From: Leucoraja ocellata | Lineage: Eukaryota | DNA: 64,000 nucleotides | Assembly: GCA_036785375.1 (NCBI GenBank) | Contig: JAWMAR010001141.1 | Span: 62,001 to 126,000, forward strand | Reading direction: 5' to 3' | Shown here: positions 18,501-61,056 of the stretch, piece by piece | Layout: each line of letters starts with the position of its first letter | How positions within the stretch are numbered: the stretch's first letter is position 1 | Translations under genes and position numbers: made by a program | The notes under the pieces: generated by a model | Databases searched by the model: none | What the model was told of the DNA's origin: nothing | Seen by the model: the letters and a program-made list of their open reading frames with translations, nothing else

Positions 18501-21500
18501 GTTAATTGACTTCTGTAAATTGTTCCTAATGTGTAGAACAGAACTGGTGTATGGGGTGATCGCTGCTCAGAGCGGACTCGGTGGGCCAAAGGGCCCATTT
18601 CCACGCTGTATCTTTAAACTGAGCTGAACTGAACTTAACTAATTTGTTCTCAGGTGAGGCTGAGTTGACTCTTCGAGTTACTGACCTGTTTCCATCTGAT
18701 GAACCAGAAGCCTCATTGGAACTTGCTGCCTTGGTGGTTGGTGTACCTTGAGGCATGGTGGTCAGAGTGGTTGTGGTGGAAGCCTTTGTGATTATTGTTG
18801 TAGAGGTGGTGCTGACCATGTCTGGGCTGCTTGTTGGAGATCCTTGTGGAGATAAAGTGAATGAAGTTTTTGAACATTAAATGTGTGAAATCACGTTCTG
18901 TGCCACTTTAGTGATGTGTGGGAGATGCCTCAGTTGGCAGCGCTCTTGCTCTGTGTGGGGAGATTCCTGGGTTCAAATCCCAATCCAGACATTTGGGCAA
19001 AGATCCTTCTGAGGCCACCATAGATGGACCAAGCCCCTTGATCTAGACCGGAGGCTCACCCATTAAGATGCCACCAGATTGTCGCAAGCATTCAGAGACT
19101 TCTTTCATGCCCTCCATAGTCCCACAGGCTGTGTTATCTGCCTGCTGCTAGAGTTAGGCACATGTCTTCTACATTGGAGAAGAACTTGGGAGCGGGAGGA
19201 TCCATGGACTATTTTCATTACGCGGACTGAATTCAAAATAATGCAATTTGGTTGGAGGTATCTACCTGAAACATTAACTCTCGTTCTCTCTCCACAGAAG
19301 CTGCCCGACCCGTTGAGTATCTCAACTTGTACAGTTTGTGTGACTCAGTGTAAAGTCTATATCACTCATCTCTTGAGGATTCTTAGTTCATTAGTTCATA
19401 AGTGATAGGGGCAGATTGAGGCCACTTGGCCCATTGAGTCTATTCCGCCTTTCAATCACGGCTGATCTATCTCTCCCTCTCAACCCCATTCTCCTGCCTT
19501 CTCCCCATATTGCTTGACACCCGTACGAATGGAGAACCTGTCAATCTCCACCTGAAAATACCCAATGACTTGGCCCTCATTGGAAACATGGTAAAAGATT
19601 TTCCCTGTACCTCAGTACAGACGACAACAATAAACTGAGCTCATGAATCACCAAAGTTTGTGAGACACAAGGAATTGCAGGTGCTGGAATTTTAAGCAAA
19701 ACACAAAGTGCTGGAGAAACTCTGCAGGTCAGGCAGCATCCGTTGTAGAAATGAACTGACACTCTTTAGTGTTGGGTCCCTTCTTCAGATGTTGTGGGTG
19801 TGACAGTGACGGGCAGGGGGAGAGGGTGAGGGGGCACCAGAGGTTCTGGCTGTTCCCCTGCTCCAGTGAGGGGCGGCAGAGGTTCTAGACCCGGAGCGAT
19901 CGTCTTTGGGGAAATGAGCCGCCAGCAGCAGAACCGCCGGTCCCCATTGATGAGCCCCCCCCCCCCCCCCCCACACACACTGCTCCTGGGACAGTGGGCT
20001 CTTGGTGTGGCCCCATGAGCCGGGACCCCAGTAAATGTGCTCCCCCCTCCTTCACCCCGACCCCCGGGGATGTGGCACCGAGTCACCGTCAGCACCGAGG
20101 CCGGGAATTCCCAGGCTGGAATGTTCACATCTGGGAGAGTGAGGAGAGATCGTCAACGTACCTTCAGAAACCGTCAATGAGATGGAGGTCCTTTCATTGC
20201 TTGAAAATATTCCCTTTACAATCACACACCAGTAGCGTCCTTCATCACTCTTCTCCAGGTTGTCGATGGTTACTGAAACTATCAGTTGTGTTTTGTTATC
20301 ACTCATCGATGTTCTCCTATATTGTGGTGAGTCATCAGTAGAAACCACGGTATCAGATATTATGTAATAGTAACCTTTCTTCCATAGCTTCTTGTTGTCA
20401 GTGTATTCCTGACCATACTGACATTCCACTGTGACCGACTGCCCCAACTCTCCCCTCACCTCCTTGGGTCCAGTTATTCCCCTTAACCCTGTGGACACAT
20501 TAATGATGAAAGATCACTCACACTGCAGCAACACAAGCTGAGGTTTAACAATAAAAAACATGTCATTTGTGCTGTTCAGACAGGTTCATGGTTTCGCATA
20601 GATCATGTGTAGCAAGGAACTGCAGGTGCTGGTTTACACCAAAGATAGACACAAAGTGCTGGAGTAACTCGGCGGATCAGGCAGAATCTCTGGAGAAAAT
20701 GGATAGGTGTCCTTTTTGGGTCGGGACCATTCTTGATCTCCCGGTTGCCAACCCTGTCCATGTCCCTTCCCATTCCCACACTGACCTTTCTGTCCTGGGC
20801 CTCCTCCATTGCCAGAGTGAGGCCACATGCAAATTGGAGGAACCGCACCTCATATTGGGCTCAGGTAGTTTACAACCCAACGGTTTGAACGTTGGTTCTC
20901 TAATTTTAAGTATCTTCTACTAACCTGCCCCCTCCCCCATTGACTCCTATCTCCACCCGGGTTTCCCACCACCTGCCCCAGTGAGGGGCGGCAGAGGTTC
21001 TGGTCCCGGAGCGATCGTCTTCGTGGAAATGAGCCGTCAGCAACAGAACCGCCGGTAGATGGGATCTTCCGTGGGGCTGGTGTCTGACAGCCCCCCCCCC
21101 CCCCCCCCCCCCCCCATACTGCTCCAGCGACAGTGAGCTCTTGGTGTGGCCCCACGGGCCGGGACCCCAGTAAGTGAGTTATCCACCCAACCCCCTTACC
21201 GCGACCCCCCCGGGGATGTGGCACCGAGTCACCGTCAGGACCGAGGCCGGGAATTCACAGGCTGGAATTTTCACATCTGGGAGAGTGAGGAGAGATCGTC
21301 AACGTACCTTCAGAAACCGTCAATGAGATGGAGGCCGATTCAATGAATGAATGTTTTCCCTTTACTATCACACACCAGTAGAGTCCTTCATCACTCTTCT
21401 CCAGGTTGTCGATGGTGACTGAAACTATCGGTTGTTCTTTGTCATCAGTCATCGATGTTCTCCCTTGTTGTGGGTGATCAGTAGAAACCACGGTAGAAGA

Positions 21501-24298
21501 TGGAAGGAAATAATCACCTTTACTCCATAGCTTGTCGTTGTCTTTGTATTTCCGATCATACTGACATTCCACAGTGACCGACTGCCCCAACTGTCCCCTC
21601 ACCTCCACGGCTTCAGTTATTCCCCTTGATCCTGTTGGCACATTAATGATGAAAGATCACTCACACTGCAGCAACACAAGCTGAGGTTTAACAATAAAAA
21701 ACATGTCATTTGTGCTGTTCAGACAGGTTCATGGTTTCGCATAGATCATGTGTAGCAAGGAACTGCAGGTGCTGGTTTACACCAAAGATAGACACAAAGT
21801 GCTGGAGTAACTCAGCGGGACGGGCAGCATCTCTGGAGAAACCGACGGGTGATGTTTCCTCGCCCATTCCTTCTCTCCAGAGATGCTGCCCGTCCCGCTG
21901 AGTTACTCCAGCATTTTGTGTCTCTCTTCTTCTGCATAGATCCTGTTGCACTTTAATGCTTTTCCCGCTGGTGTTAATTCCCATTTCACCGGGGATTGTT
22001 CCCCAAGTTCCAGTGAAAGCAGAACTGAGTTCCTTCTTGAACACTTTGTCTACTCCACTGCGATATCTATCTTCCAGCATCTGCAGTTCCTTCTTGAACA
22101 CTGCTTCTGAATCTACCTGGCGCCCAGATCCTCCTTCCCTGTGGGCGTGGCTTGACCGGAGTGGTGGTCATGTGACAGGAAGCCAACCTGTCACTCACTC
22201 TGACCCACCCTGTGTTCAATCTCACTACAACCCACTTCCCCATTGAACTAGTAGAAACAAGGAACTGCAGATGCTGGTTAATGTACAAAAGGACACAAAG
22301 TGCCGGAGTAACACAACGGGACAGGAACTATCTCTGGAGAAAGAGGAACTCTCTGGGTGAAAAGATATTTCCTCATCTGAGTCCTCAATGGCCTACCCGT
22401 TATTGAGGTCACAACCTTAAACTGGACAGGAACTATCTCTGGAGAAAGTGGATAGATGATGATTCATAGAAACATATAAACATAGAAAATAGGCGCAGGA
22501 GGAGATGATTCGGCCCTTCGAGCCGGCACTGCCCAGTTCTGCTTGCTCCCGTTATCCCATGATTCCATTAGCCCTAAGAGCTAAATCTAACTCTCTCTTG
22601 AATACATCCAGTGAATTGGCCTCCACTGCCCTCTGTGGCAGAGAATTCTACAGATTCACAACTCTGGGTGAAAAGGTTTCTACCCCATCTTAACTTAATT
22701 GTGTGTGTTAGTTGTCTGTGCGTTATGTGTGTGTGTGTGTGTGTGGGAGGGAGGGAGGGAAGTAGAGAAAGAAGGGATGGAGCGAATGGGACCCTCTGGA
22801 TACATGGATAGGACAGATTTGAAAGGACTTGGACCAAACATGGACAGGTGGGACTAGTGTTGCTGAGACATGTTGGCCGGTGTGGGCAAGAAGGGCCGAA
22901 GGGCCTGTTTCCACACTGTATCACTCTATGACTCTAACACATGTGAAACTCTGCAGATTCAGGAGCTGGGGTGGAGACACATCATCGCATCAGTCCAGGT
23001 CGGCTCACAAGCCACAAGACAAATGCCTTGAAGGAGAACTCAGAGGCTTTGGAAAGCACAGTGTGTAGAACAGCTCGAGCAGCAGAGTCTGTTGTAAGGC
23101 AGCTGGTTTTTCTCAGAAGGGAGAGATTACCACAACTTCTCCAAATGCTAAATTGGACAGTCACTCTGGTGCTTCCTCATTTGAGATGACGCCTGTTCCC
23201 AATGGCTGGCTTTCACAGGTTTTTTCTTTGAATGTGCTAAGGTTTAGGTTCAACATTTCCCATTGCAGTGCGTGGAGGGAGTGCCGTGTGTCTTTGATAG
23301 ACACTAAAATGCTGGAGTAACGCAGCGGGTCAGGGGGCATCTCTGGAGAGAAGGAATGGGTGACGTTTCGGGTCGAGACCTTTCTTCAGACCCACAGTCA
23401 GGGAGGGAGGAAGTCAAGAGATATGCAAGGGGTAAAGCATTTAGCTGATCTGCTGTCAAGTCACTGAGCACACAGCATCACAACAGTCATTAGTGCAGGG
23501 AAGAACAAGTCTGCAAGCATTTTATCTTTAGCAGCTCGTAGCCCAGTTGTCTGCTCTGTGGCTCAAAATAATTCAAGGTGCTGGCAAATAATTCTGAAGA
23601 ACAGATCACAAGTTCATTAGTACTAGGAGCAGAATTAGGCCATTTGGCCCATCAAGTCTACTCTCCCCCATTCAATTATGGCTGATCTATCTTTCCCTCT
23701 CAACTAAATCCTCCTGCCTTTTCCCCAGGTCTCCTGACACCAGTACTGATCAAGAATCTATCCCATCTCGGCCTTAGAAATACCTATTGATGGCCTCCGC
23801 AGTCTGTGGCAATGAATTTCCACAGTTTCTGTCTCACAAAATTCCTCCTCATCTCCTTCCTAAAGCAACGCCCTTTAATTCTGAAGCTGCGACCTCTGGT
23901 CCTAGAGTCTCCCACTAGTGTAAACATCCTCACCCCATCCACTCTATCCAGGCCTTTCACTATTCAGTAAGTTTCAATGAGGTCCACAAGGCAAGGCAAG
24001 CTGTAGATAGTTATCTCCCGACTTGGGCTGCAACACAACACGACAACAACCACTGATGGAAGTCTCTACAGGAACTAACGAGTGTTGAGCAATTCATCAT
24101 CAGCTCCCCACACAGTACAGAGAGGTCTGTGGTTACAAATAATTCAAGGCGTTGGTAAATAATTCCTCAGAACAGAGCATTTTGTAAAACAACGATTTAC
24201 CTGGTGTGAGACCAACAGCGACAAGAACCAACAGAGCGACCTGTTCCCCTGGATCTGGGCCATCTCTGGTGGGTGAATTCTCCCTGTCCCACCGCCAT
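15441..24298 (-). CDS. Gene 2: inhibitory CD300/pIgR-like (MDIR-type) receptor, about 407 aa if the leader is intact. Exons 24201-24298 (leader, +1 frameshift), 21308-21631 (Va), 20162-20488 (Vb), 18686-18842 (mucin stalk), 17983-18092 (TM), 16276-16328, 15441-15596 (ITIM tail)
   Basis: GT-AG introns with consistent phases from Va to the stop (1,1,2,1,0). TM VVLPIALTIVFLLFIAGIILCV then KMRQRKK. Tail contains VIYTTV, TYMNL and VVYATI. The leader is 98 nt against 97 nt in the gene 3 paralog. Confidence 0.8.
15705..15740 (-). ncRNA. Minimal hammerhead ribozyme motif in a Penelope-derived repeat (also 1297-1332 and 56649-56685 on +)
   Basis: CUGAAGA-A-GGGU(CUCG)ACCC-GAAAC-GUC core with a palindromic minimal stem III. 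Confidence 0.55.
16618..17575 (-). mobile_element. CR1 LINE endonuclease/linker fragment in a gene 2 intron
   Basis: EDFLECIRDGFLYQYVEEPT...LDWVLCNE; PEDWEKFR. Confidence 0.8.
17983..18092 (-). CDS. Gene 2 transmembrane exon (uncharged)
   Basis: VTFSWKVVLPIALTIVFLLFIAGIILCVKMRQRKKT; acceptor ttttgcag, donor gtaagt, phase 2-1. Confidence 0.88.
18686..18842 (-). CDS. Gene 2 Ser/Thr-rich mucin-like stalk exon
   Basis: GSPTSSPDMVSTTSTTIITKASTTTTLTTMPQGTPTTKAASSNEASGSSDGNR; 157 nt, acceptor ctttatctccacaag, donor gtcagt. Confidence 0.85.
20162..20488 (-). CDS. Gene 2 V-set Ig exon Vb
   Basis: GQSVTVECQY...W...SDEGRYWC...ISLTVSE; 327 nt, phase 1-1, ccacag/gtacgt. Confidence 0.92.
21308..21631 (-). 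CDS. Gene 2 V-set Ig exon Va
   Basis: GQSVTVECQYDRKY...W...SDEGLYWC...ISLTVSE; 324 nt, phase 1-1. Confidence 0.92.
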
Positions 24299-32934: not shown

Positions 32935-34227
32935 CTGAAAAGCTAAACGATGATTATTGGGCGTCATTTCCGTCAGAATAACAATATTGATATAACGATT
33001 ACCCTTCATTTTTATCTTATTCTTCTAACGCGTGTCCACAGTTCATTACGTAATCATTTAACCGTTTTTACATCCCCATTGTTCAATGGTTCAATGGTAC
33101 TTTATTGTCTCATGCACATGCGTACAGTGACATTTCTTTTGTATAGAATTCAGTAAAAATCTTACTTGATATAAGCACAGCTGAAGCTAAGAACAAGAGT
33201 ATTAATAGCAGATTATATGATGCAGTACACAAGAGTTGCCACATTACTGGCAGTATCTTATATTCTTAAACATCAAACTGGGCTTAAAGGCCATTTTATT
33301 TGGGTTTAAAGGCCCGTTGTCATGGAGACGGCACTGGGTGGGAGTTGCAGGGGTCGGCCTGGCCTGGCGATGTTGTCGGTGCCTCCACCACCGCTCCGTG
33401 CCGCTGCAGGCCGTGTCCGATCCGCGCGCTCGTCCCCGACTCTGTGGGGCCTCCAGCGGCACCCGATCCACTGGCTGCTGCAGGGCCTCCAGCAGCCCAC
33501 TCGCACTCCGCCCACACCTCGACCCACCAACGCACCCTTTTCCCCTGCCTCCCACGGCCGTCTCCATGCGAGGTGAGGCCTCACCCAGCCAGCTCACCGG
33601 CGCTGTTCCTCTCCTTCCTCCACCACTGCCGACCCCATCTCCAAGGTCTTGGCTTTTTTTTCCTTGAATAACAATTAAAACACAGTTTATAATCTCCACC
33701 ATCAAATTTTACCCGAGGAAATGACCCAGGGCGGCACAGTGGCGCAGCGGTAGAGTTGCTGCCTTACAGCGCCAGAGACCCGGGTTTGATCATGACTACG
33801 GGTGCTGTCTGTACGGAGTTTGTATGTTCTGCCTGTGACAGCGTGGGTTTTATCTGGGTGCTCCGGTTTCTTACCACAATCCAAAGACGTGTAGTTTTGT
33901 AGGTTAATTGGCCTCTGTATAATTGTAAATTGTCCCTCGTGTGTAGGATAGTGCGAGTGTACGGGGTGATCATTGGTCGGCGCGGACTTGATTGGCTGTA
34001 TACCCTTTAATAATATCTGACAATGTGCACTTTAACCACGTGTGATTTTTTCAATTACAAATCTCAAATTGTGGAATACAGAGGCAAATAAATAAATGAA
34101 GGGTCTTTGTCCCAAACATTATGGAGGGCGCTGTATGTCCACACTTTATCTCTACAAATCGAAAGTAAATTCCCATCATTTCCAGTTGAATTTAATGTGA
34201 ACATCAGAGTGAAGAGATTGCAAACTT

Positions 34228-34342
34228 TCACCTTTTCAAAGTTGTCACACAGCTGATGGAAACCGGGAAGAGAAGCAGAATTCCAAAGAGTACCCAGCGT
34301 AACACACCCCAAACACGGCAAACGATGTTCAGCATGGTGTCC
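34228..34342 (-). CDS. Gene 3 transmembrane exon with charged Arg (activating type)
   Basis: Acceptor ttccttggatttccag, phase 2 matching the stalk donor. The correct frame (VWGVLRWVLFGILLLFPVSI) is not in the ORF track. Confidence 0.82.
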
Positions 34343-35391
34343 CTGGAAATCCAAGGAAATATTATTACTTCCACACAGAGTTACCACAGATCAACGCTGG
34401 CAATTTTCTTTCATCATATTGCCCCTGGAATCATTCAGTGTGATCCAAGGTTTTGGCGTGGACATTGGTGAGATGTTGATATCGCAACATGCACCCATTC
34501 CTTGGAGGTGTTCCATGACTACATACATTAACAACTTAGATGTTCATTTTGATGGTCAGACATAGAGCACGAAAACATGTCCTTTGACCCAATTTCCCCC
34601 ACGCCGACCAAGATGTCCTTATCTACACTAGTCCCATCTGCCGGCCTTAGATGTTAATGTTGGAAGTATGATTTACGAGTTTACAGATTACACCAACATT
34701 GTCTCATTTTGGATAGTACGATAATCATAGACCACAGAGGGATAAGAAGCAACTGGTATGTTGGGCAGAGCAATGCCAGCAGGTATTGAACTGTGATAAG
34801 TGTGAAGTTATTTGTTTTTGGCATCATGTAAGGGTAGACATTCACAATGGTAGGGCCACTGGGTGTACTAAGGACAGAGGGACTTTAGTCAGGGCCAAGG
34901 AGTATTTATCAATGGACTGGAATGTGATCAGCCACGCTTTCTCAAAGTACTGGGACTTTGAGTCACTGACCTGTGTCGAGGCGATGAACCAGGAGTCCCT
35001 GGTGGTCGATGCTTCTGGAGGCAGAGTGGGTGTGGTGGTTCCTGAGGTGGTGGTGACCATATTTTAATCCAGTTTAGTTTAATTTTGAGATATAGCGCGG
35101 AAACAGGCCCGACGGCCCATGGAGTCCACACCGACCATCGATCCTCGCACACTAACACTAGGCTACACACACACTAGGGTCAATTGACACATACGCCAAG
35201 CCAATCTACTTACATACCTGTATGTCTTTAGAGTGTTGGAGGAAATCAAAGATCTCAGAGAAAACCCATGCGGTCGTGGGGATAACGTACAAACCCCGTA
35301 CAGGCAGCACCTGTAGTCGGGATCGAACCTGGGTCTCTGGCGCTACAAGCGTTGTAAGGCAGCAACTCTACCGCTGCGCCACCGTGCAACC

Positions 35392-35422
<31 letters not shown>

Positions 35423-38400
35423 ACCAAAGTGGTGAGGATATCTGGGTGATATGTTTGAGACCCTTGTGAAGATAAAGTGAATGAAGTCTTTGAACATTAA
35501 ATGTTTATAATCACGTTCTGTGTCACTTTAGTGACGTGTGGGAGATGCTTCAGTTCGGAACGATCTTGCTCTGTGTGGGGAGATTCTTGATTCGAATCCC
35601 AAACCTGAGATTTGAGCAAGGATCCTTCCTAAACCACCATAGATGGACCAAGCCCCTTGATCTAGACATGAGGCTCGCCCATTGAGATGTCAGCTCAGCG
35701 GTAGAGTTGCTGCCTCACAGCACAGTAGACGCGGGGTCGATCCTGATACCGGTGCTGTCAGTGCAGAGTCTGTACGTTCTCCATGTGATCGCAAGAGTTT
35801 ACTCTGGGTTCTCCAGTTTCCTCCCACATTCCAAAGACGTGCGGGTTTGTAGTAAGTTGCCCCTAGTGTGTAGAACAGAACTGGTGTATGGGGTGATCGC
35901 TGCTCAGAGCGGACTCGGTGGGCCAAAGGGCCCATTTCCATGCTGTATCTTTAAACTGAGCTGAATTGAACTGAACTAATTGGTTCTCAGGTGAGGCTGA
36001 GTTGGCTCTTCGAGTTACTAACCTGTTTGTAGGTGTTGAACCAGGAGACTCTGTGGAACTTGCTGCCTTGGTGGTTGGTGCATCTTGAGGCATGGTGGTC
36101 AGAATGGTTGTGGTGGAAGCCTTTGTGCTTATTGTTGCAGAGGTGGTGCTGACCATGTCTGGGTGGCTTGTTGGAGATCCTTGTGGAGATAAAGGGAATG
36201 ACGTTTTTGAACATTAAATGTCTGAAAGTACGTTCTGTGCCACTTTAGTGATGTGTGGGAGATGCCTCAGTCGGGAGCGCTCTTGCTCCGTGTGGGGAGA
36301 TTCCTGGGTTCAAATCCCAATCCAGAGATTTGAGCAAAGATCCTTCTGAGGCCACCATAGATGGACCAAGCCTCTTGATCTAGACCGGAGACTCACCCAT
36401 TAAGATGCCACCAGATGGTCACAAGCATTCAGAGACTTCTTTCATGCCCTTCAGAGTCCCACAGGCTGTGTTATCTGCCTGCTGCTAGAGTTAGGCACAT
36501 GTCTTCTACACTGGAGAAGAACTTGGGAGCGGGAGGATCCATGGACTATTTTCATTACGCGGACTGAATTGGAAATAATGCAATTTGGTTGGAGGTATCA
36601 CCTGAAACATTAACTCTCGTTCTCTCTCCACAGAAGCTGCCCGACCCGTTGAGTATCTCATCTTGTAGAGTTTGTGTGACTCAGTGTAAAGTCTATATCA
36701 CTCATCTCTTGAGGATTCTTAGTTCATTAGTTCATAAATGATAGGGGCAGATTGAGGCCATTTGGCCCATTGAGTCTATTCCACCTTTCAATCACGGCTG
36801 ATCTATCTCTCCCTCTCAACCCCATTCTCCTGCCTTCTCCCCATATCGCTTGACACCCGTACTAATTGAGAACCTGTCAATCTCCACCTGAAAATACCCA
36901 ATGACTTGGCCCTCATTGGAAACATGGTAAAAGCTTTTCCCTGTACCTCAGTACAGACGACAACAATAAACTGAGCTCATGAATCACCAAAGTTTGTGAG
37001 ACACAAGGAATTGCAGGTGCTGGAATTTTAAGCAAAACACAAAGTGCTGGAGTAACTCAGCAGGTCAGGCAGCATCCGTTGTAGAAATGAACTGACAATG
37101 TTTAGTGTTGGGTCCCTTCTTCAGATGTTGTGTGTGTGGTGGGTGTGACAGTGACGGGCAGGGGGAGAGGGTGAGGGGGCACCAGAGGTTCTGGCTGTTC
37201 CCCTGCTCCAGTGAGGGGCGGCAGAGGTTCTGGACCCGGAGCGATCGTCTTTGGGGAAATGAGCCGCCAGCAGTAGAACCGCCGGTCCCCATTGATGCCC
37301 CCCCCCCCCCACACACACACACACACACTGCTCCTGGGACAGTGGGCTCTTGGTGTGGCCCCATGGGCCGGGACCCCAGTAAATGTGCTCCCCCCTCCTT
37401 CACCCCGAACCCCCGGGGATGTGGCACCGAGTCACCGTCAGGACCGAGGCCGGGAATTCCCAGGCTGGAATGTTCACATCTGGGAGAGTGAGGAGAGATC
37501 GTCAACGTACCTTCAGAAACCGTCAATAAGATGGAGGTATTTTCATTGCTTGAAAATATTCCCTTTACAATCACACACCAGTAGCGTCCTTCATCACTCT
37601 TCTCCAGGTTGCCGATGGTGACTGAAACTATCCGATGTGTTTTGTTATCAGTCATCGATGTTCTCCCTCGTCGTGGGTGATCAGTAGAAACCACGGTAGA
37701 AGAAAACAGGTAATAATCACCTTTACTCCATAGCTTGTCGTTGTCTCTGTATTCCTGACCATACGGACATTCCACAGTGACCGACTGCCCCAACTCTCCC
37801 CTCACCTCCTTGGGTCCAGTTATTCCCCTTGACCCTGTGGGCACATTAATGATGAAAGATCACTCACACTGCAGTAACACAGGGGGCGGCAGAAGTTCTG
37901 GTCCCGGAGCGATCGTCTTCGAGGAAATGAGCCGTCAGCAACAGAACCGCCGGTAGATGGGACCTTCCGTGGGGCAGGTGTCTGACAGCCCCCCCCCCCC
38001 CCCCCCCCCCATATTGCTCCTGGGACAGTGAGCTCTTGGTGTGGCCCCACGGGCCGGGACCCCAGTAAGTGAGTTATCCACCCAACCCCCTTACCGCGAC
38101 CCCCCGGGTATGTGGCACCGAGTCACCGTCAGGACCGAGGCCGGGAATTCCCAGGCTGGAATTTTCACATCTGGGAGAGTGAGGAGAGATCGGCAACTTA
38201 CCTTCAGAAACCGTCAATGAGATGGAGGCCGAATCGTTTCCCTTTACAATCACACACCAGTAGAGTCCTTCATCACTCTTCTCCAGGTTGTCGATGGTGA
38301 CTAAAACTATCCGTTGTGTTTTGTCATCAGTCATCGATGTTCTCCCTCGTCGTTGGTCATCAGTAGAAACCACAATATAAGATTTCTGGTAATAATCACC

Positions 38401-47574: not shown

Positions 47575-48817
47575 TTGAGGATGTAACTAGTAGCGTGGAT
47601 AGGGGAGAACCAGTGGATGTGGTGTATCTGGACTTCCAGAAGGCTTTCGACAAGGTCCCACATAAGAGATTAGTATACAAACTTAAAGCACATGGCATTG
47701 GGGGTTCAGTATTGATGTGGATAGAGAACTGGCTGGCAAACAGGAAGAGTAGGAGTAAACGGGTCCTTTTCACAATGGCAGGCAGTGACTAGTGGGGTAC
47801 CGCAAGGCTCAGTACTGGGACCCCAGCTATTTACAATATATATTAATGATCTGGATGAGGGAATTGAAGGCAATATCTCCAAATTTGCGGATGACACTAT
47901 GCTGGGGGGCAGTGTTAGGTGTGAGGAGGATGCTAGGAGACTGCAAGGTGACTTGGATAGGCTGGGTGAGTGGGCAAATGTTTGGCAGATGCAGTTTAAT
48001 GTGGATAAATGTGAGGTTATCCATTTTGGTGGCAAAAACGGGAAAGCAGATTATTATCTAAACGGTGGCCGATTGGGAAAGGGGGAGATGCAGCGAGACC
48101 TGGGTGTCATGGTACACCAGTCATTGAAGGTAGGCATGCAGGTGCAGCAGGCAGTAAAGAAAGCGAATGGCATGTTGGCTTTCATAGCAAGAGGATTTGA
48201 GTATAGGAGCAGGGAGGTTCTACTGCAGTTGTATAGGGTCTTGGTGAGACCACACCTGGAGTATTGCGTGCAGTTTTGGTCTCCAAATCTGAGGAAGGAC
48301 ATTATTGCCATAGAGGGAGTGCAGAGAAGGTTCACCAGACTGATTACTGGGATGTCAGGACTGTCTTATGAAGAAAGACTGGATAGACTTGGTTTATACT
48401 CTCTAGAGTTTAGGAGATTGAGAGGGGATCTTATAGAAACTTACAAAATTCTTAAGGGGTTGGACAGGCTAGATGCAGGAAGATTGTTCCCGATGTTGGG
48501 GAAGTCCAGGACAAGGGGTCACAGCTTAAGGATAAGGGGGAAATCCTTTAAAACCGAGATGAGGAGAACTTTTTTCACACAGAGAGTGGTGAATCTCTGG
48601 AACTCTCTGCCACAGAGGGTAGTTGAGGCCAGTTCATTGGCTATATTTAAGAGGGAGTTAGATGTGGCCCTTGTGGCCAAGGGGATCAGAGGGTATGGAG
48701 AGAAGGCAGGTACGGGATACTGAGTTGGATGATCAGCCATGATCATATTAAATGGCGGTGCAGGCTCGAAGGGCCGAATGGTCTACTCCTGCACCTAATT
48801 TCTATGTTTCTATGTTT
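47575..48817 (+). mobile_element. Young 5'-truncated HER1/CR1 LINE with an open 312-aa RT C-terminal ORF
   Basis: ORF 47785..48723 (GVPQGSVLGP, FADDT, RPHLEYCVQFW); TSD ctaat; empty site at about 30015. Confidence 0.95.
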
Positions 48818-49540: not shown

Positions 49541-49542
49541 GT

Positions 49543-53000: not shown

Positions 53001-53565
53001 CTTGAATAACAATTAAAACACAGTTTATAATCTCCACCATCAAATTTTACCCGGAGGAAATGACCCAGGGTGGCACAGTGGCGCAGCGGTAGAGTTGCTG
53101 CCTTACAGCGCCAGAGACCCGGTTTGATCATGACTACGGGTGCTGTCTGTACAGAGTTTGTATGTTCTGCCTGTGACAGCGTGGGTTTTATCCGGGTGCT
53201 CCGGTTTCTTACCACAATCCAAAGACGTGTAGTTTTGTAGGTTAATTGGCCTCTGTATAATTGTAAATTGTCCCTCGTGTGTAGGATAGTGCGCGTGTAC
53301 GGGGTGATCATTGGTCGGCGCGGACTTGATTGGCTGTATACCCTTTAATAAAATCTGACAATGTGCACTTTAACCACATGTGATTTTTTCAATTACAAAT
53401 CTCAAATTGTGGAATACAGAGGCAAATAAATAAATGAAGGGTCTTTGTCCCAAACATTATGGAGGGTGCTGTATGTCCACACTTTATCTCTACAAATCGA
53501 AAGTAAATTCCCATCATTTCCAGTTGAATTTAATGTGAACATCAGAGTGAAGAGATTGCAAACTT

Positions 53566-53680
53566 TCACCTTTTCAAAGTTGTCACACAGCTGATGGAAA
53601 CCGGGAAGAGAAGCAGAATTCCAAAGAGTACCCAGCGTAACACACCCCAAACACGGCAAACGATGTTCAGCATGGTGTCC
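53566..53680 (-). CDS. Gene 4 Arg-containing transmembrane exon
   Basis: Same translation as 34228-34342. Confidence 0.82.
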
Positions 53681-56600
53681 CTGGAAATCCAAGGAAATAT
53701 TATTACTTCCACACAGAGTTACCACAGATCAACGCTGGCAATTTTCTTTCATCATGTTGCACACGGAATCATTCAGTGTGATTCAAGGTTGTGGCTTAGA
53801 CATTGGTGAGATGTTGATATCGCAACATGCACCCATTCCTTGGAGGTGTTCCACGACTACATACATTAACAACTTAGATGTTCATTTTGATGGTCAGACA
53901 TAGAGCACGAAAACATGTCCTTTGACCCAATTTCCCCCACGCCGACCAAGATGGCCTTATCTACACTAGTCCCATCTGCCGGCCTTAGATGTTAATGTTG
54001 GAAGTATGATTTACGAGTTTACAGATTACACCAACATTGTCTCATTTTGGATAGTACGATAATCATAGACCACAGAGGGATAAGAAGCAACTGGTATGTT
54101 GGGCAGAGCAATGCCAGCAGGTATTGAACCATGATAAGTGTGACGTTATTTGTTTTTGGCATCATGTAAGGGTAGACATTCATAATGGTAGGGCCACTGG
54201 GTGTACTAAGGACAGAGGGACTTTAGTCAGGGCCAAGGAGTATTTATCAATGGACTGGAATGTGATCAGCCACGCTTTCTCAAAGTACTGGGACTTTGAG
54301 TCACTGACCTGTGTCGAGGCGATGAACCAGGAGTCCCTGGTGGTCGATGCTTCCGGAGGCAGAGTGGGTGTGGTGGTTCCTGAGGTGGTGGTGACCATAC
54401 TTTAATCCAGTTTAGTTTAGTTTTGAGATATAGCGCGGAAACAGGCCTGACGGCCCATGGAGTCCACACTGACCAGCGATCCTCGCACACTAACACTAGG
54501 CTACACACACTAGGGGCAATTGACACATACGCCAAGCCAATCTACTTACATACTTGTATGTCTTTAGAGTGTTGGTGGAAATCAAAGATCTCAGAGAAAA
54601 CCCATGCGGTCATGGGGATAACGTACAAACCCCGTACAGGCAGCACCTGTAGTCGGGATCGAACCTGGGTCTCCAGCGCTACAAGCATTGTAAGGCAGCA
54701 ACTCTACCGCTGCGCCACCATGCAACCCCCCACACACACACACACACACACGCACCAAAGTGGTGAGGATATCTGGGTGATATGTTTGAGACCCTTGTGA
54801 AGATAAAGTGAATGAAGTCTTTGAACATTAAATGTTTATAATCACGTTCTGTGTCACTTTAGTGACGTGTGGGAGATGCTTCAGTTCGGAACGATCTTGC
54901 TCTGTGTGGGGAGATTCTTGATTCGAATCCCAAACCTGAGATTTGAGCAAGGATCCTTCCTAAACCACCATAGATGGACCAAGCCCCTTGATCTAGACAT
55001 GAGGCTCGCCCATTGAGATGTCAGCTCAGCGGTAGAGTTGCTGCCTCACAGCACAGTAGACGCGGGGTCGATCCTGATACCGGTGCTGTCAGTGCAGAGT
55101 CTGTACGTTCTCCATGTGATCGCAAGAGTTTACTCTGGGTTCTCCAGTTTCCTCCCACATTCCAAAGACGTGCGGGTTTGTAGTAAGTTGCCCCTAGTGT
55201 GTAGAACAGAACTGGTGTATGGGGTGATCGCTGCTCAGAGCGGACTCGGTGGGCCAAAGGGCCCATTTCCATGCTGTATCTTTAAACTGAGCTGAATTGA
55301 ACTGAACTAATTGGTTCTCAGGTGAGGCTGAGTTGGCTCTTCGAGTTACTAACCTGTTTGTAGGTGTTGAACCAGGAGACTCTGTGGAACTTGCTGCCTT
55401 GGTGGTTGGTGCATCTTGAGGCATGGTGGTCAGAATGGTTGTGGTGGAAGCCTTTGTGCTTATTGTTGCAGAGGTGGTGCTGACCATGTCTGGGTGGCTT
55501 GTTGGAGATCCTTGTGGAGATAAAGGGAATGACGTTTTTGAACATTAAATGTCTGAAAGTACGTTCTGTGCCACTTTAGTGATGTGTGGGAGATGCCTCA
55601 GTCGGGAGCGCTCTTGCTCCGTGTGGGGAGATTCCTGGGTTCAAATCCCAATCCAGAGATTTGAGCAAAGATCCTTCTGAGGCCACCATAGATGGACCAA
55701 GCCTCTTGATCTAGACCGGAGACTCACCCATTAAGATGCCACCAGATGGTCACAAGCATTCAGAGACTTCTTTCATGCCCTTCAGAGTCCCACAGGCTGT
55801 GTTATCTGCCTGCTGCTAGAGTTAGGCACATCTTTTCTACATTGGAGAAGAACTTGGGAGCGGGAGGATCCATGGACTATTTTCATCACGCGGACTGAAT
55901 TGGAAATAATGCAATTTGGTTGGAGGTATTTACCTGAAACATTAACTCTCATTCTCTCTCCACAGAAGCTGCCCGACCCGTTGAGTATCTCATCTTGTAC
56001 AGTTTGTGTGGCTCAGTGTAAAGTCTATATCACTCATCTCTTGAGGATTCTTAGTTCATTAGTTCATAAGTGATAGGGGCAGATTGAGGCCATTTGGCCC
56101 ATTGAGTCTATTCCACCTTTCAATCATGGCTGATCTATCTCTCCCTCTCAACCCCATTCTCCTGCCTTCTCCCCATATCGCTTGACACCCGTACTAATGG
56201 AGAACCTGTCAATCTCCACCTGAAAATACCCAATGACTTGGCCCTCATTGGAAACATGGTAAAAGCTTTTCCCTGTACCTCAGTACAGACCACAACAATA
56301 AACTGAGCTCATCAATCACCAAAGTTTGTGAGACACAAGGAATTGCAGGTGCTGGAATCTTGAGCAAAACACAAAGTGCTGGAGTAACTCAGCAGGTCAG
56401 GCAGCATCCGTGGAAGGAATGAACTGACAATGTTTAAGGTTGGGTCCCTTCTTCACCGGAGGAACAGCACCTCATATTCCGTTTGGGGAGTCTGCACCCC
56501 GGGGGCATGAACATCGACTTCTCCCAATTCTGTTAGTCCTTGCTGTCTCCTCCCCTTCCTCAGCTCCCCTGCTGTCCCCTCCCACCCTCCAGCCTTCCGG

Positions 56601-56942
56601 CTACTCCTCCTTTTCCCTTTCTTGTCCCCACCCACCCCCACCCCTGATCAGTCTGAAGAAGGGTTTCGGCCCGAAACGTTGCCTATTTCCTTCGCTCCAT
56701 AGATGCTGCTGCACCCGCTGAGTTTCTCCAGCTTTTCTGTGTAACCTCCCTTCTTCAGATGTTGTGTGCGTGGTGGGTGTGACAGTGATGGGCAGGGGGA
56801 GAGGGTGAGGGGGCACCAGAGGTTCTGGCTGTTCCCCTGCTCCAGTGAGGGGCGGCAGGGGTTCTGGACCCGGAGCGATCGTCTTTGGGGAAATGAGCCG
56901 CCAGCAGCAGAACCGCCGGTCCCCATTGATGAGCCCCCCCCC

Positions 56943-56973
<31 letters not shown>

Positions 56974-59900
56974 ACACTGCTCCTGGGACAGTGGGCTCTT
57001 GGTGTGGGCCCATGGGCCGGGACCCCAGTAAATGTGCTCCCCCCTCCTTCACCCCGACCCCCGGGGATGTGGCACCGAGTCACCGTCAGGACCGAGGCCG
57101 GGAATTCCCAGGCTGGAATGTTCACATCTGGGAGAGTGAGGAGAGATCGTCAACGTACCTTCAGAAACCGTCAATGAGATGGAGGTCCTTTTATTGATTG
57201 GAAATATTCCCTTTACAATCAGCACACACCAGTAGTATCCTTCATCACTCTTCTCCAGGTTGTCGATGGTGACTGAAACTATCCGTTGTTTTTTGTCATC
57301 AGTCATCGATGTTCTCCTATATTGTGGGTCATCAGTAGAAACCACGGTAGAAGAATTTGTGTAATAATAACCTTTACTCCATAGCTTGTCGTTGTCTTTG
57401 TATTTCCGATCGTACCGACATTCCACAGTGACCGACTGCCCCACCTCTCCCCTCACCTCCTCGGGTCCAGTTATTCCCCTTGACCCTGTGGGCACATTAA
57501 TGATGAAAGATCACTCACACTGCAGCAACACAAGCTGTGGTTTAACAATAAAAAACATGTCATTTGTGCTGTTCAGACAGGTTCATGGTTTCGCATAGAT
57601 CATGTGTAACAAGGAACTGCAGGTGCTGGTTTACACCAAAGATAGACACAAAGAGCCGGAGTAACTCAGTGGGACAGACAGCATCTCGGGAGAAACCGAC
57701 GGGTGATGTTTCCTCACCCATTTCCTTCTCTCCATAGATGCTGCCCTTCCTGCTGAGTTACTCCAGCATTTTGTGTCTCTCTCCTTTTGCATAGATCCTG
57801 GTGCACTTTAATGCTTTTCCCGCTGGTGTTAATTCCCATTTCACTGGGATTATTGTTGTAGAGGTGGTGGTGACCATGTCTGGGCGGCTTGTTTGAGACC
57901 CTTGTGGAGATAAAGTGAATGACGTTTTTGAACATTAAAAGTCTGAAAGCACGTTCTGTGCCACTTTAGTGATGTGTCGGAGATGCCTCAGTCGGGAGCG
58001 CTCTTGCTCCGTGTTGGGAGATTCCTGGGTTCAAATCCCAATCCAGAGATTTGAGCAAGGATCCTTCTGAGGCCCCCATAGATGGACCAAGCCCCTTGAT
58101 CTAGTCATCTCATGAGGATTCTTCGTTCATACGTTATAGAAACATAGAAAATAGGTGCAAGAGGAGGCCATTCAGCCCTTCGAGCCTGCACCGCCATTCA
58201 CTGTGATCAGGGCTGAACGTCCCCAATCAATAACCCGTGCCTGCCTTCTCCCCATATCCCTTGATTCCACTAGCCCCTGGAGCTCTATCTAACTCTCTCT
58301 TAAATCCATCCAGTGATTTGGCCTCCACTGCCCTCTGTGGCACGGAATTCCACAAATTCACAACTCTCTGGGTGAAAAAGTTTTTTCTCACCGCAGTCTG
58401 AAATGGCCTCCCCTTTATTCTAAGGCTGTGGCCCCTGGTTCTGGACTTGCCCAACATTGGGAACATTTTTCCTTCATCAAGCTTGTCCAGTCCTTTTATA
58501 ATTTTATAAGTTTCTATAAGAAACCCACTCATCCTTCTAAACTCCAGTTTTGAGCCTAGTCTTTTCAATCTTTCCTCATATGACAGTCCCGCCATCCCAG
58601 GGAGCAATCTCGTGAACCTACGCTGCACTGCCTCAATCACAAGGATGTTCTTCCTCAAATTAGACCAAAACTGTACACAATACTCCAGATGTGGTCTTAC
58701 CAGAGCCTGATACAACTGCGGAAGAACCCCTCTACTACTGTACTGAAATCGTCTTGTTATGAAGTTCATGTGATAGGGGCAGAATGCGGCCATTTGGCTT
58801 ATTTATGTCTACTCCGCCATTCAATCATGGCTGATCTATCTCTCCCTCTCAACCCCATTATCTTCCCTTCTCCCCATATCGCTTGACACTCATACTAATC
58901 GAGAACCTGTGAATCTTAAAAATACCCAATGATTTGGCCTTCATTGGAAACATGGTAAAAGCTTTTCCCTGTACCTCAGTACAGACGACAACAATAAACT
59001 GAACTCATGAATCACCAAAGTTTGTGAGACACAAGGAATTGCAGGTGCTGGAATCTTGAGCAAAACACAAAGTGCTGGAGTAACTCAGCAGGTCAGGCAG
59101 CATCTGTGGAAGGAATGAACTGACAATGTTTAGTGTTGGGACCTTTCTACAGATGTTGTGTGTGTGGTGGGTGTGACAGTGACGGGCAGGGGGAGAGGGC
59201 ACCAGAGGTTCTGGCTGTTCCCCTGCCCCAGTGAGGGGCGGCAGGGGTTCTGGACCCGGAGCGATCGTCTTTGGGGAAATGAGCCGCCAGCAGCAGAACC
59301 GCCGGTCCCCATTGATGAGCCCCCCCCCCCCCCCCCCCCCCACACACACACTGCTCCTGGAACAGTGGGCTCTTGGTGTGGCCCCATGGGCCGGGACCCC
59401 AGTAAATGTGCTCCCCCCTCCTTCACACCGACCCACGGGGATGTGGCACCGAGTCACCGTCAGGACCGAGGCCGGGAATTCCCAGGCTGGAATGTTCACA
59501 TCTGGGAGAGTGAGGAGAGATCGTCAACGTACCTTCAGAAACCGTCAATAAGATGGAGGTCCTTTTATTGATTGGAAATATTCCCTTTACAATCAGCACA
59601 CACCAGTAGTATCCTTCATCACTCTTCTTCAGGTTGTCGATGGTGACTGAAACTATCCGTTGTGTTTTGTTATCACTCATCGATGTTCTCCTATATTGTG
59701 GGTCATCAGTAGAAACCACGGTAGAAGAATTTGTGTAATAATAACCTTTACTCCATCGCTTCTTGTTGTCACTGTATTCCTGACCATACTGACATTCCAA
59801 AGTGACCGACTGCCCCAACTCTCCCCTCACCTCCTTAGGTCCAGTTATTCCCCTTGACCCTGTGGACACATTAATGATGAAAGATCACTCACACTGCAGC

Positions 59901-61056
59901 AAGAGGTTCTGGACCCGGAGCGATCGGCTTTGGGGAAATGAGCCGCCAGCAGCAGAACCGCCGGCAGCACAAGCTGAGGTTTAACAATAAAAAACATGTC
60001 ATTTGCGCTGTTCAGACAGGTTCATGGTTTTGCATAGATCATGTGTAGCGAGGAACTGCAGGTGCTGGTTTAAACCAAAGATAGACACAAAGTGCTGGAG
60101 TAACTCGGCGGATCAGGCAGAATCTCTGGAGAAAATGGATAGGTGTCCTTTTCGGGTTCAGACCATTCTTGATCTCCCGGTTGCCAACCCTGTCCATGTC
60201 CCTTCCCATTCCCACACTGACCTTTCTGTCCTGGGCCTCCTCCATTGCCAGAGTGAAGCCACATGCAAATTGGAGGAACCGCACCTCATATTGGGCTCAG
60301 GTAGTTTACAACCCAACGGTTTGAACGTTGGTTCTCTAATTTTAAGTATCTTCTACTAACCTGCCCCCTCCCCCATTGACTCCTATCTCCACCCGGGTTT
60401 CCCACCACCTGCCCCAGTGAGGGGGCGGCAGAGGTTCTGGTCCCGGAGCGATCGTCTTCGTGGAAATGAGCCGTCAGCAACAGAACCGCCGGTAGATGGG
60501 ACCTTCCGTGGGGCTGGTGTCTGACAGCCCCCCCCCCCCCCCATATTGCTCCAGCGACAGTGAGCTCTTGGTGTGGCCCCACGGGCCGGGACCCCAGTAA
60601 GTGAGTTATCCACCCAGCCCCGTTACCGCGACCCCCGGGGATGTGGCACCGAGTCACCGTCAGGACCGAGGCCGGGAATTCACAGGCTGGAATGTTCACA
60701 TCTAGGAGAGTGAGGAGAGATCGTCAACGTACCTTCAGAAACCTTCAATGAGATGGAGACCAATTCAATGGGTGAATCGTTTCTCTTTACTATCACACAC
60801 CAGTAGAGTCCTTCATCACTCTTCTCCAGCTTGTCGATGGTGACTAAAACTATCTGGTGTGTTTTGTCATCAGTCATCGATGTTCTCCGTTGTTGTGGGT
60901 CATCAGTAGAAACCACAGTATAAGATTTCTGGTAAGAATCACCTTTCCTCCACAGCTTCCTGTTGTCCTTGTATTCCTGACCATACTGACATTCCACTGT
61001 GACCGACTGCCCCAACTCTCCCCTCACCTCCTCGGGTTCAGTTATTCCGCTTGACC
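53566..61056 (-). CDS. Gene 4 (5'-partial): activating-type receptor with three V exons. Exons 60733-61056 (Va), 59533-59859 (Vb), 57159-57485 (hybrid V), 55354-55510 (stalk), 53566-53680 (Arg-TM); leader predicted just beyond the window end
   Basis: All V exons are open and phase 1-1. Stalk and TM translate identically to gene 3. Window position about 63960 corresponds to about 42000 in the gene 3 unit, placing the leader roughly 600-700 nt past 64000. Confidence 0.72.
56456..56746 (+). mobile_element. Penelope-like 3' fragment inserted only in this copy
   Basis: Nearly identical to 1105-1394; 11-bp TSD tcccttcttca (56445-56455 and 56747-56757); empty sites at about 19780 and 37115. Confidence 0.88.
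57159..57485 (-). CDS. Gene 4 membrane-proximal hybrid V exon
   Basis: ORF 57049..57495; 327 nt, phase 1-1. Confidence 0.9.
57758..57900 (-). pseudogene. 3'-truncated stalk exon fused to intron sequence (fusion junction about 57850)
   Basis: Intact acceptor, then GSQTSRPDMVTTTSTTII, then a switch to the intron normally upstream of Va; TAA at 57758-57760; no donor seen. Confidence 0.75.
58134..58760 (-). mobile_element. HER1/CR1 LINE 3' fragment
   Basis: ORF 58227..58793 (LVRPHLEYCVQFW...GYGEKAGTGY). Confidence 0.9.
59533..59859 (-). CDS. Gene 4 V exon Vb
   Basis: ORF 59423..59869; 327 nt, phase 1-1. Confidence 0.9.
60733..61056 (-). CDS. Gene 4 V exon Va
   Basis: ORF 60680..61066; 324 nt, phase 1-1. 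Confidence 0.9.

What the first reader, a model, noticed from the sequence alone, without database searches (positions are those of the whole stretch)
20162..61056. Seven V domains hypervariable in three loops while stalk and TM are frozen
Seen: frameworks are nearly invariant but three loops differ. BC loop: YGQEYTDN, YDRKYKDN, YGQEYRDN, YGQQYRDN, YGQEYSDN, YGQEYKDN. C-C' loop: YYYIISD, DYFLPSS, DYYLFSS, DYYQKSY, YYYTNSS, DSYQKSY. FG loop: KGIFSSNER, KGKHSFIES, KGIFSSNEN, KGND(del4), KGIFPINKR, KRNDSPIEL, with only in-frame indels. Paralogous Vb exons 37511 and 59533 differ at about 22 of 109 residues by hand count, whereas the stalk and TM of the same two genes translate identically. Inference: strong diversifying selection on a ligand-binding face, giving a germline-encoded CDR-like repertoire.
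Basis: partly seen in the sequence, partly recalled or inferred. Interest (0 to 1): 0.85.

Follow-up and report, generated by a model that had tools for sequence, protein, structure and literature searches.

The report
Fast-evolving skate immune receptor V domains
Three neighbouring immune-receptor genes of a skate carry seven binding-domain exons that differ far more than the DNA around them, mostly by amino-acid-changing differences and by swapped patches, a pattern already well known from other innate immune receptor families.

Summary
Seven intact 312-327 nt V-set exons lie on the minus strand at the stated coordinates, and all loop strings and the 22/109 count are correct.

They belong to three tandem CD300/pIgR-like genes of a skate, Leucoraja erinacea or a close relative. 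One gene is inhibitory (ITIM) and two are activating (Arg in the TM).

- **Exon versus intron:** between recent duplicates the V exons differ 3-6 times more than flanking DNA, e.g. 39/324 vs 13/685.
- **Selection:** whole-exon dN/dS is about 2.8. Only 1 of 200 neutral simulations reached that value.
- **Site models:** the M1a/M2a test is not trustworthy. My null simulations inflate it.
- **Conversion:** the exons are mosaics (Rm at least 10, PHI p about 0.02). About half of the differences reuse states found in other exons.

- The frameworks are not nearly invariant (36/88 columns vary).
- The C'D and DE loops and the G strand also vary, and the CC' loop has omega about 0.85.
- The "frozen" stalk/TM only reflects a very recent duplication, because the introns there are identical too.

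An unchecked note from this scan reports similar arrays elsewhere in this genome. This is a new member of a known kind.

The parts
20162..20488 (-). V1: second (membrane-proximal) V-set exon of gene A, 327 nt
   Evidence: AG/GT borders, phase 1, open frame. Pfam V-set E 4e-11. AF2 model pLDDT 91.4.
21308..21631 (-). V2: first (D1-type) V-set exon of gene A, 324 nt
   Evidence: Pfam V-set E 1e-14.
37511..37834 (-). V3: second V-set exon of gene B, 324 nt
   Evidence: A few RNA reads from run X24 fall in its bins.
38202..38513 (-). V4: first (D1-type) V-set exon of gene B, 312 nt, with a 12-nt in-frame deletion in the FG loop
   Evidence: Pfam V-set E 2e-12.
57159..57485 (-). V5: third V-set exon of gene C, a hybrid exon
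   Evidence: Its upstream intron is D1-like and its downstream intron D2-like. The BC region equals V2 and the rest is nearly V6.
59533..59859 (-). V6: second V-set exon of gene C
   Evidence: Protein identical to domain 2 of L. erinacea XP_055510911.1.
60733..61056 (-). V7: first (D1-type) V-set exon of gene C
   Evidence: One residue differs from domain 1 of XP_055510911.1.
18685..18870 (-). Ser/Thr-rich stalk exon of gene A (approximate borders from tblastn)
36022..36207 (-). Stalk exon of gene B (approximate borders)
   Evidence: 0/186 nt differences from gene C, inside about 1 kb of complete identity.
55353..55538 (-). Stalk exon of gene C (approximate borders)
17981..18094 (-). TM exon of gene A, uncharged TM (inhibitory type)
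   Evidence: Translation. 89% identical to L. erinacea P0158.
15444..15599 (-). Cytoplasmic exon of gene A with two ITIM-like motifs (VIYTTV, VVYATI)
   Evidence: tblastn 51/52 identical to P0158.
34219..34347 (-). TM exon of gene B with Arg residues in the membrane span (activating type)
   Evidence: Translation. tblastn.
53557..53685 (-). TM exon of gene C, identical to that of gene B
   Evidence: 0/129 nt differences. tblastn.
42625..42723 (-). Leader exon of gene B
   Evidence: tblastn 97% to the Amblyraja leaders. Sequence.
24199..24298 (-). Leader exon of gene A, with one extra G relative to gene B that shifts the frame
   Evidence: tblastn splits into two frames. Sequences compared.

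Best explanation
**What it is.** The seven exons are the ligand-binding V-set domains of three tandemly duplicated CD300/pIgR-like (MDIR-type) paired receptor genes of a skate.
- Gene A: V2-V1, uncharged TM, ITIM tail, so inhibitory.
- Gene B: V4-V3, Arg in the TM and a short tail, so activating.
- Gene C: V7-V6-V5, with the same activating stalk and TM as gene B.

**How it evolves.** The gene copies are young, with about 2% flank divergence. The V exons behave as a shared, older pool of variants.
- Short-tract gene conversion and unequal crossing-over move patches, often whole loops, between V exons of the same and neighbouring genes.
- Selection for amino-acid difference keeps and adds replacements.

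The outcome is a germline set of receptors with one conserved Ig scaffold and different BC, CC', C'D, DE and FG loops. N-glycan sequons also differ from exon to exon.

**What is shown and what is inferred.**
- Shown: the exon-specific excess of divergence, omega above 1 for the whole exon, the mosaic structure, and the gene architecture.
- Inferred: that the variable loops form the ligand site (by analogy with CD300lf), and that pathogens or variable self ligands drive the selection.
- The identical stalk and TM of genes B and C are a by-product of a very recent duplication or conversion tract. They are not evidence of constraint.
For: **Architecture.** tblastn of skate proteins onto the window. 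TM translations. Pfam V-set.

**Family.** The best PDB sequence hits are pIgR and CD300lf. The AF2 model (pLDDT 91.4) matches CD300lf at TM 0.89 and 36% identity.

**Exon versus flank.**
- V2-V7: 39/324 vs 13/685 (p 9e-11).
- V1-V3: 31/324 vs 6/343.
- V5-V6: 19/327 vs 6/338.
- V3-V5: 32/324 vs 7/335.
- The 100-nt divergence profiles peak on every V exon.

**Selection.**
- NG86 omega exceeds 1 in 21 of 21 pairs.
- ML M0 omega is 2.8, and 2.7-3.5 under four codon-frequency models.
- Omega is 3.25 without gene A, 2.4 within the D1-type exons and 2.8 within the D2/single-type exons.
- Only 1 of 200 simulations with omega = 1, gamma rate variation and mosaic trees reached the observed omega or LRT.

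**Conversion.**
- 40% of informative site pairs are incompatible, Rm is at least 10 in 324 nt, and PHI p is 0.016-0.023 for windows of 5 and 10 sites (0.084 for 15).
- V5 carries V2's BC region and V6's remainder.
- At 46 of 89 differences in three independent recent pairs, both states occur in other exons.
- Synonymous divergence is 5.6% against 1.8% in flanks.

**Same columns vary in other skates.** The same alignment columns vary in 18 V domains of three skate species.

Against: - Only seven short sequences were available, and recombination violates the single-tree assumption.
- The site-model test is inflated under my null: 19 of 23 replicates exceeded 5.99, with a maximum of 43.5 against 56.6 observed. 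The list of 'selected sites' is therefore unreliable.
- In three independent pairs, nonsynonymous versus synonymous divergence is only marginal (10.1% vs 5.6%, p 0.044).
- The CC' loop has omega 0.85, and the strands alone give 1.76, not significant.
- Gene A's leader is frameshifted, so two of the seven exons may sit in a pseudogene.
- Expression of these exact exons is not shown. There are a few RNA reads at depth 2 or less, and the reads listed carry 4-5 mismatches.
- Polymorphism in DNA runs shows no visible exon excess: 9 listed differences in 636 exon nt against 22 in about 1665 other nt. The 95% filter and short contigs make this inconclusive.
- No model coordinates were available, so 'one surface' was not measured.
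Confidence: 0.65

Rival explanations
1. Shuffling only. The seven exons are mosaics of a few ancient domain lineages (D1-type, D2-type, single-V type). These are exchanged by gene conversion and unequal crossing-over inside young duplicates. There is no ongoing positive selection, and the excess of replacements is inherited from old divergence or is a statistical artefact of recombination and rate heterogeneity.
For: - Mosaic structure and incompatibilities.
- About half of the differences reuse existing states.
- Synonymous sites are also about 3 times flank level.
- The CC' loop is fast, but at synonymous sites too (omega 0.85).
- The D1-type clade includes an Amblyraja domain (SH-aLRT 96).
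- The site-model LRT is strongly inflated under a null with recombination.
Against: - Conversion alone moves variation but does not create dN above dS. Whole-exon omega of 2.8 was reached by 1 of 200 neutral mosaic simulations.
- Omega stays above 2 within each lineage.
- 43 of 89 differences in recent pairs have at least one state unique within the window.
Confidence: 0.2
2. Relaxed constraint or a mutational hot spot. Some or all copies are decaying pseudogenes, or the V exons mutate faster, so the divergence is neutral.
For: - Gene A's leader has a 1-nt frameshift.
- Gene C contains a LINE fragment and a stalk-like remnant between V6 and V5.
- Synonymous divergence in the exons is raised.
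Against: - All seven exons keep open frames, canonical splice sites, only in-frame indels and both Ig cysteines.
- Neutrality predicts omega near 1, not 2.8.
- Omega is 3.25 when gene A is left out.
- V6 and V7 match an annotated L. erinacea protein model.
Confidence: 0.08
3. Assembly artefact. Collapsed or chimeric assembly of near-identical tandem repeats created false mosaics.
For: The region is a nest of 93-97% identical duplicates. The public-run contigs laid on it are short and patchy.
Against: - V6 is 100% identical and V7 differs at 1 residue from domains of an independently annotated protein.
- The window has no N.
- Contigs from three runs cover parts of the V exons with few differences.
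- The divergence peaks coincide exactly with exon borders in four independent pairings.
Confidence: 0.04

Closest known systems
Mouse CD300lf (CLM-1) and the CD300/CMRF35 family
   Same: It is the best structural match to the model (TM 0.89, 36% identity), and the family shows strong sequence matches. Both are single V-set domains on a Ser/Thr-rich stalk, with inhibitory ITIM and activating charged-TM partners. In CD300lf the ligand cavity lies between the CDR3 (FG) and CC' loops (PMC6166816, passages). Those are two of the most variable loops here. Gene conversion between paired CD300A and CD300C is reported in primates (PMC12447643, abstract).
   Different: The skate domains lack the second disulfide (Cys36-Cys44 in CD300lf) that floors that cavity. 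They are strung as 2-3 V domains per chain. Here conversion diversifies as well as homogenises. No ligand is known.
[quoted passage not shown] 2006, Immunogenetics 58:362)
   Same: A skate multigene family of one to several Ig ectodomains with activating, inhibitory and other forms, related to CD300, TREM and pIgR. This description comes from PMC3031540 (passages). Further detail is recalled, because the paper itself was not held.
   Different: Identity with the published MDIR1-5 sequences could not be checked. As far as I recall, that paper did not report exon-versus-intron divergence, dN/dS or loop shuffling.
Teleost and holostean NITRs and DICPs
   Same: Clustered germline Ig-domain receptors with inhibitory, activating and secreted forms, D1/D2 domain types, high sequence diversity within a species and gene-content variation (bioRxiv 10.1101/2021.06.11.448072, passages).
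   Different: They are different Ig lineages in bony fishes. NITR V domains carry a J-like segment, and none is seen here.
Polymeric Ig receptor (the name given by automatic annotation)
   Same: Several CD300-type V domains in tandem. pIgR domains are the top sequence hits in the PDB. NCBI names the skate models 'polymeric immunoglobulin receptor-like'.
   Different: The tails are ITIM-bearing or short with a charged TM, so these are signalling receptors. The genes sit in a polymorphic tandem family. Binding to polymeric Ig is untested.
KIR/LILR and MHC class I style evolution (recalled textbook cases)
   Same: Tandem birth-and-death families in which exons encoding the binding site are more diverse than the introns around them, with dN above dS and exchange of short segments.
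   Different: They are unrelated genes and ligands. In this window the comparison is between paralogues, not alleles.

Membership tests
Immunoglobulin V-set domain (PF07686) | Match above the Pfam gathering score, the B-F disulfide cysteines and the C-strand Trp | tested here: met
   3 of the 3 exons submitted (V1, V2, V4 of the 7) score 43-55 bits against a cut-off of 26. C22, W35 (nearly invariant) and C87 are conserved in the 17-row alignment.
CD300/pIgR-type V domain | Closest sequences and folds are CD300 and pIgR domains | tested here: met
   Against the PDB, pIgR gives E 5e-24 and CD300lf E 1e-16. Foldseek puts CD300lf first at TM 0.89, followed by pIgR D1.
CD300/pIgR-type V domain | Second intradomain disulfide linking the C strand and the C' strand (Cys36-Cys44 in CD300lf, PMC6166816) | tested here: not met
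   Each of the seven exons has only two cysteines, and the motif after Trp35 is K/S/R, not C. One Amblyraja relative has KLWCKG.
CD300/pIgR-type V domain | Metal- and lipid-binding residues of the CDR3/CC' cavity | not testable with these tools
   No residue-level alignment to CD300lf could be obtained, because pIgR chains fill the alignments shown. No model coordinates are given.
MDIR family of skates | Clustered multigene family in a skate with a modular number of Ig ectodomains | tested here: met
   There are three genes with 2, 2 and 3 V exons in 45 kb. The nearest proteins are from Leucoraja, Amblyraja and Rhinoraja.
MDIR family of skates | Activating (charged TM) and inhibitory (ITIM) forms | tested here: met
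   Gene A has an uncharged TM plus VIYTTV and VVYATI motifs. Genes B and C have Arg in the TM.
MDIR family of skates | Sequence identity with the published MDIR1-5 | not tested
   The published sequences and the paper were not available.
Polymeric Ig receptor proper | A single-copy transport receptor with a long cytoplasmic tail that binds polymeric Ig | tested here: not met
   The genes form a tandem family with ITIM or charged-TM signalling ends. Ig binding could not be tested.
Rapidly evolving paired Ig-like receptor clusters (KIR/LILR/NITR kind) | dN above dS in the binding domain and exchange between paralogues | tested here: met
   Omega is 2.8, with 1 of 200 neutral simulations as extreme. 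Rm is at least 10 and PHI p is about 0.02.
Rapidly evolving paired Ig-like receptor clusters (KIR/LILR/NITR kind) | Allelic and gene-content polymorphism between individuals | tested here: inconclusive
   Laying public runs gave short contigs and no clear exon excess of differences.

The most novel reading that the evidence does not exclude
The V exons work as a germline 'loop cassette' system. Short conversion tracts, bounded by the conserved framework, swap individual BC, CC'/C'D and FG loops between V exons of the same and neighbouring genes. Each haplotype would then carry a different combinatorial set.

The window's V5 equals domain 3 of the annotated L. erinacea protein except in exactly two loop patches, and those patches are copies of the neighbouring V6. 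If the two are alleles, individuals of one skate species differ by whole binding loops in an innate receptor. That would be a polymorphic, conversion-driven repertoire in a cartilaginous fish, alongside and independent of RAG-based receptors.
Probability: 0.3. Interest if true: 0.7.

Novelty: new member of a known kind. Interest (0 to 1): 0.5.

Why it matters
Cartilaginous fishes are the oldest lineage with antibodies and T-cell receptors, and little is known about their innate Ig-type receptors. This window gives a clean, quantified case. CD300/pIgR-like paired receptors of a skate diversify their binding domains through replacement-biased change and exon-to-exon conversion, while the rest of each gene is a near copy of its neighbour.

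This places the mode of evolution known from KIR, LILR, NITR and MHC in this lineage as well. It also points to specific loops (BC, CC', C'D, DE, FG) for binding studies. The result is expected in kind, so its value lies in documentation and in the loop-swap detail, not in a new principle.

Tried and rejected
1. **Site-model LRTs as proof of selected sites.** M1a/M2a gave 56.6 and M7/M8 gave 56.6. I rejected these as evidence after my own null simulation, which used omega of 1 or less, gamma rates and mosaic trees. It gave 19 of 23 replicates above 5.99, a median of 17 and a maximum of 43.5. The run was stopped by time at 23 of the 48 planned replicates.
2. **'Frozen stalk/TM' as evidence of constraint.** Rejected. 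The identity covers introns too, and the A-B stalks differ.
4. **Cannon et al. 2006 and Cannon et al. 2010.** Neither is held. MDIR facts come from passages of PMC3031540 and from recall.
5. **Residue-level mapping on CD300lf.** The alignments shown are filled by pIgR chains, and no model coordinates are exposed. Only loop-level mapping is given.
6. **GFCC' sheet versus ABED sheet.** From the table, 12 of 30 strand columns vary against 5 of 21. This is only a trend, and no test was run.
7. **Polymorphism and expression from public runs.** Both were inconclusive. A high-copy repeat at about 36780-37130 dominates the laying.
8. **Literature on selection in chondrichthyan CD300-like or MDIR genes.** Searches found none in the held library. 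Subscription papers are mostly not held, and supplements were not consulted.


Full report
**What is there.** The window is a nest of tandem duplicates 93-97% identical to one another (self-BLAST). On the minus strand lie seven V-set exons with AG/GT borders and phase 1 at both ends:
- V1 20162-20488
- V2 21308-21631
- V3 37511-37834
- V4 38202-38513
- V5 57159-57485
- V6 59533-59859
- V7 60733-61056

Their lengths are 327, 324, 324, 312, 327, 327 and 324 nt, so every indel is in frame. The three exons submitted to Pfam (V1, V2, V4) pass the V-set cut-off.

tblastn of skate proteins onto the window places the exons in three genes.
- Gene A: leader 24199-24298, V2, V1, stalk, an uncharged TM and a tail exon at 15444-15599 with two ITIM-like motifs. 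That tail exon is 51/52 identical to an L. erinacea protein.
- Gene B: leader 42625-42723, V4, V3, stalk, a TM with Arg residues and a short tail.
- Gene C: V7, V6, a LINE fragment and a stalk-like remnant, then V5 and the same stalk and TM as gene B. Its leader lies beyond the window.

I described the genes exon by exon.

**Whose genome, and which family.** The nearest proteins are automatic models from skates and rays named 'CMRF35-like molecule' or 'polymeric immunoglobulin receptor-like'. Leucoraja erinacea XP_055510911.1 has a domain 2 identical to V6 and a domain 1 that differs from V7 at one residue. The window is therefore L. erinacea or a very close relative. This is an inference.

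In the PDB the best sequence matches are pIgR and CD300lf. An AlphaFold model of V1 (pLDDT 91.4) matches mouse CD300lf at TM 0.89 and 36% identity.

Skate receptors of this kind were named MDIRs. I saw that only as cited in PMC3031540 (passages), because the original paper was not held.

**The observation.** The stalk and TM exons of genes B and C are identical (0/186 and 0/129 nt).

I defined the loops from the model's secondary structure. On that basis 15 of 21 columns in BC, CC' and FG vary, against 36 of 88 elsewhere (p 0.015). The three loops are therefore enriched, but the frameworks are not nearly invariant. The C'D loop (6/9), the DE loop (3/4), the first part of strand G and position 84 vary as well.

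N-glycan sequons sit at four different places, and no pattern is shared by more than two exons.

**Exon against intron.** This is the strongest result. Flank similarity identifies the recent duplicate pairs, and in those pairs the exon is far more diverged than the flanks.

| Pair | Exon differences | Flank differences | p |
|---|---|---|---|
| V2-V7 | 39/324 | 13/685 | 9e-11 |
| V1-V3 | 31/324 | 6/343 | 1e-5 |
| V3-V5 | 32/324 | 7/335 | 2e-5 |
| V5-V6 | 19/327 | 6/338 | 0.007 |

Divergence profiles in 100-nt steps peak exactly on the V exons in four pairings.

Genes B and C are 2.05% diverged over 5.4 kb (111/5412). They are 100% identical over about 1 kb that holds the stalk exon and its introns. 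The 'frozen' stalk and TM therefore reflect recency, not constraint. Between genes A and B the stalk exon differs at 5-13 per 100 nt.

**Selection.**
- Nei-Gojobori omega exceeds 1 in all 21 pairs, ranging from 1.14 to 3.82.
- My own maximum-likelihood codon model gives omega 2.8, with an LRT against omega = 1 of 14.7.
- The estimate is 2.7-3.5 under four codon-frequency models.
- It is 3.25 without gene A, 2.4 within the D1-type exons and 2.8 within the others.

Recombination and rate variation can mislead such tests, so I simulated neutral evolution with omega = 1, gamma rates and 4-8 blocks with different trees. Only 1 of 200 replicates reached the observed omega or LRT.

The site models looked overwhelming, with 2dlnL of 56.6. 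A null with omega of 1 or less inflated that test badly: 19 of 23 replicates exceeded 5.99, with a maximum of 43.5. I therefore do not rely on the list of 'selected sites'.

By region, omega is as follows:
- 4.5 for non-strand codons (p 2e-4)
- 1.76 for strands (not significant)
- 7.2 for BC
- 4.5 for FG (not significant)
- very high for C'D and DE, which have no synonymous change
- 0.85 for CC', which is fast at synonymous sites too

**Shuffling.**
- Of 41 informative sites, 40% of pairs are incompatible. At least 10 recombination events are needed in 324 nt, and PHI gives p 0.016-0.023 for windows of 5 and 10 sites (0.084 for 15).
- V5 is the clearest mosaic. Its upstream intron is of the D1 type and its downstream intron of the D2 type. 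Its BC region is identical to V2, and from column 117 onwards it is nearly V6.
- In three independent recent pairs, 46 of 89 differences have both states present in other exons of the window.
- Synonymous divergence in the exons is 5.6% against 1.8% in flanks (p 0.002). In the by-eye loop columns pS is 0.155 against 0.047 in the rest.

Together these results indicate old variants that are kept and moved around, with replacements favoured.

A tree of 25 skate V domains puts a D1-type clade (SH-aLRT 96) that includes an Amblyraja domain, whereas all eight Rhinoraja domains cluster by species. The same alignment columns vary in each species.

[quoted passage not shown] A CDR1 substitution halves binding (PMC6166816, passages). 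The skate domains vary most in these loops, but they lack the Cys-Cys bridge that floors the cavity. The Tyr-rich CC' loops resemble protein-binding paratopes, which is an inference. No ligand is known.

**Expression and polymorphism.** One RNA run gave a few reads (depth 2 or less) in bins of the V3, V4 and stalk exons, and otherwise only over a repeat-dominated intron stretch at about 36609-37130. The reads listed carry 4-5 mismatches, and no splice joints were seen. Contigs from three other runs were short. The listed differences show no exon excess: 9 in 636 nt against 22 in about 1665 nt, with 20 more rows not shown. Both questions stay open.

**Limits.** No model coordinates were available. 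Supplements were not consulted. The supplementary alignments of the CD300lf paper might have allowed a residue-level map.

**Verdict.** Three changes are needed. Gene conversion is a major part of the mechanism. The variable region is wider than three loops. The frozen stalk/TM argument is invalid. The system is a new, well-quantified member of a known kind of rapidly evolving paired Ig-like receptor cluster. An unchecked note from this scan (s1-884625) reports similar arrays elsewhere in this genome.

Noticed in passing
window 24199-24298 (-) compared with 42625-42723 (-): Gene A's leader exon has one extra G (ACAGGTCGC against ACAGTCGC in gene B). This shifts the frame of the signal peptide, so the inhibitory gene may be a pseudogene here, or this may be an assembly slip.
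   Followed up: partly
window 57851-57928 and 58136-58800: Between V6 and V5 lie an 18-27 residue stalk-start remnant and a LINE/RT fragment. V5's upstream intron is of the leader-intron (D1) type. Gene C therefore looks like a fusion of a two-V gene with a single-V activating gene.
   Followed up: partly
window 3630-4013 and 5338-5673 (-): Two further V-set ORFs of a different CD300-like gene lie here. They keep cysteines near the C and C' strands (KFLCK...NSC and VSWCK...GCN). Their Pfam V-set E-values are 1e-3 and 4e-9.
   Followed up: no
window 36780-37130: A very high-copy interspersed repeat lies in the intron below V3. Word depths reach millions in three runs, and the RNA run has many reads that only partly fit.
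   Followed up: no
window 10032-11343, 27850-29575, 47574-48815, 58136-58800, 40404-41020: Several copies and fragments of a reverse-transcriptase-bearing retroelement (LINE-like ORFs) are scattered between the receptor genes. Some lie at the edges of duplication blocks.
   Followed up: no
window 19950-20030, 37290-37340, 56900-56960, 59290-59330: Poly-G and (TG)n tracts sit about 130-200 nt downstream of the D2-type V exons. Length changes there account for most of the flank indels.
   Followed up: no
P0156 and P0157 (Rhinoraja longicauda proteins): All eight V domains of these two four-V models cluster by species, and their variation is concentrated at one CC' column and one G-strand column. 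P0156 seems to carry both an inhibitory-type and an activating-type TM, so it may be a fused gene model.
   Followed up: no
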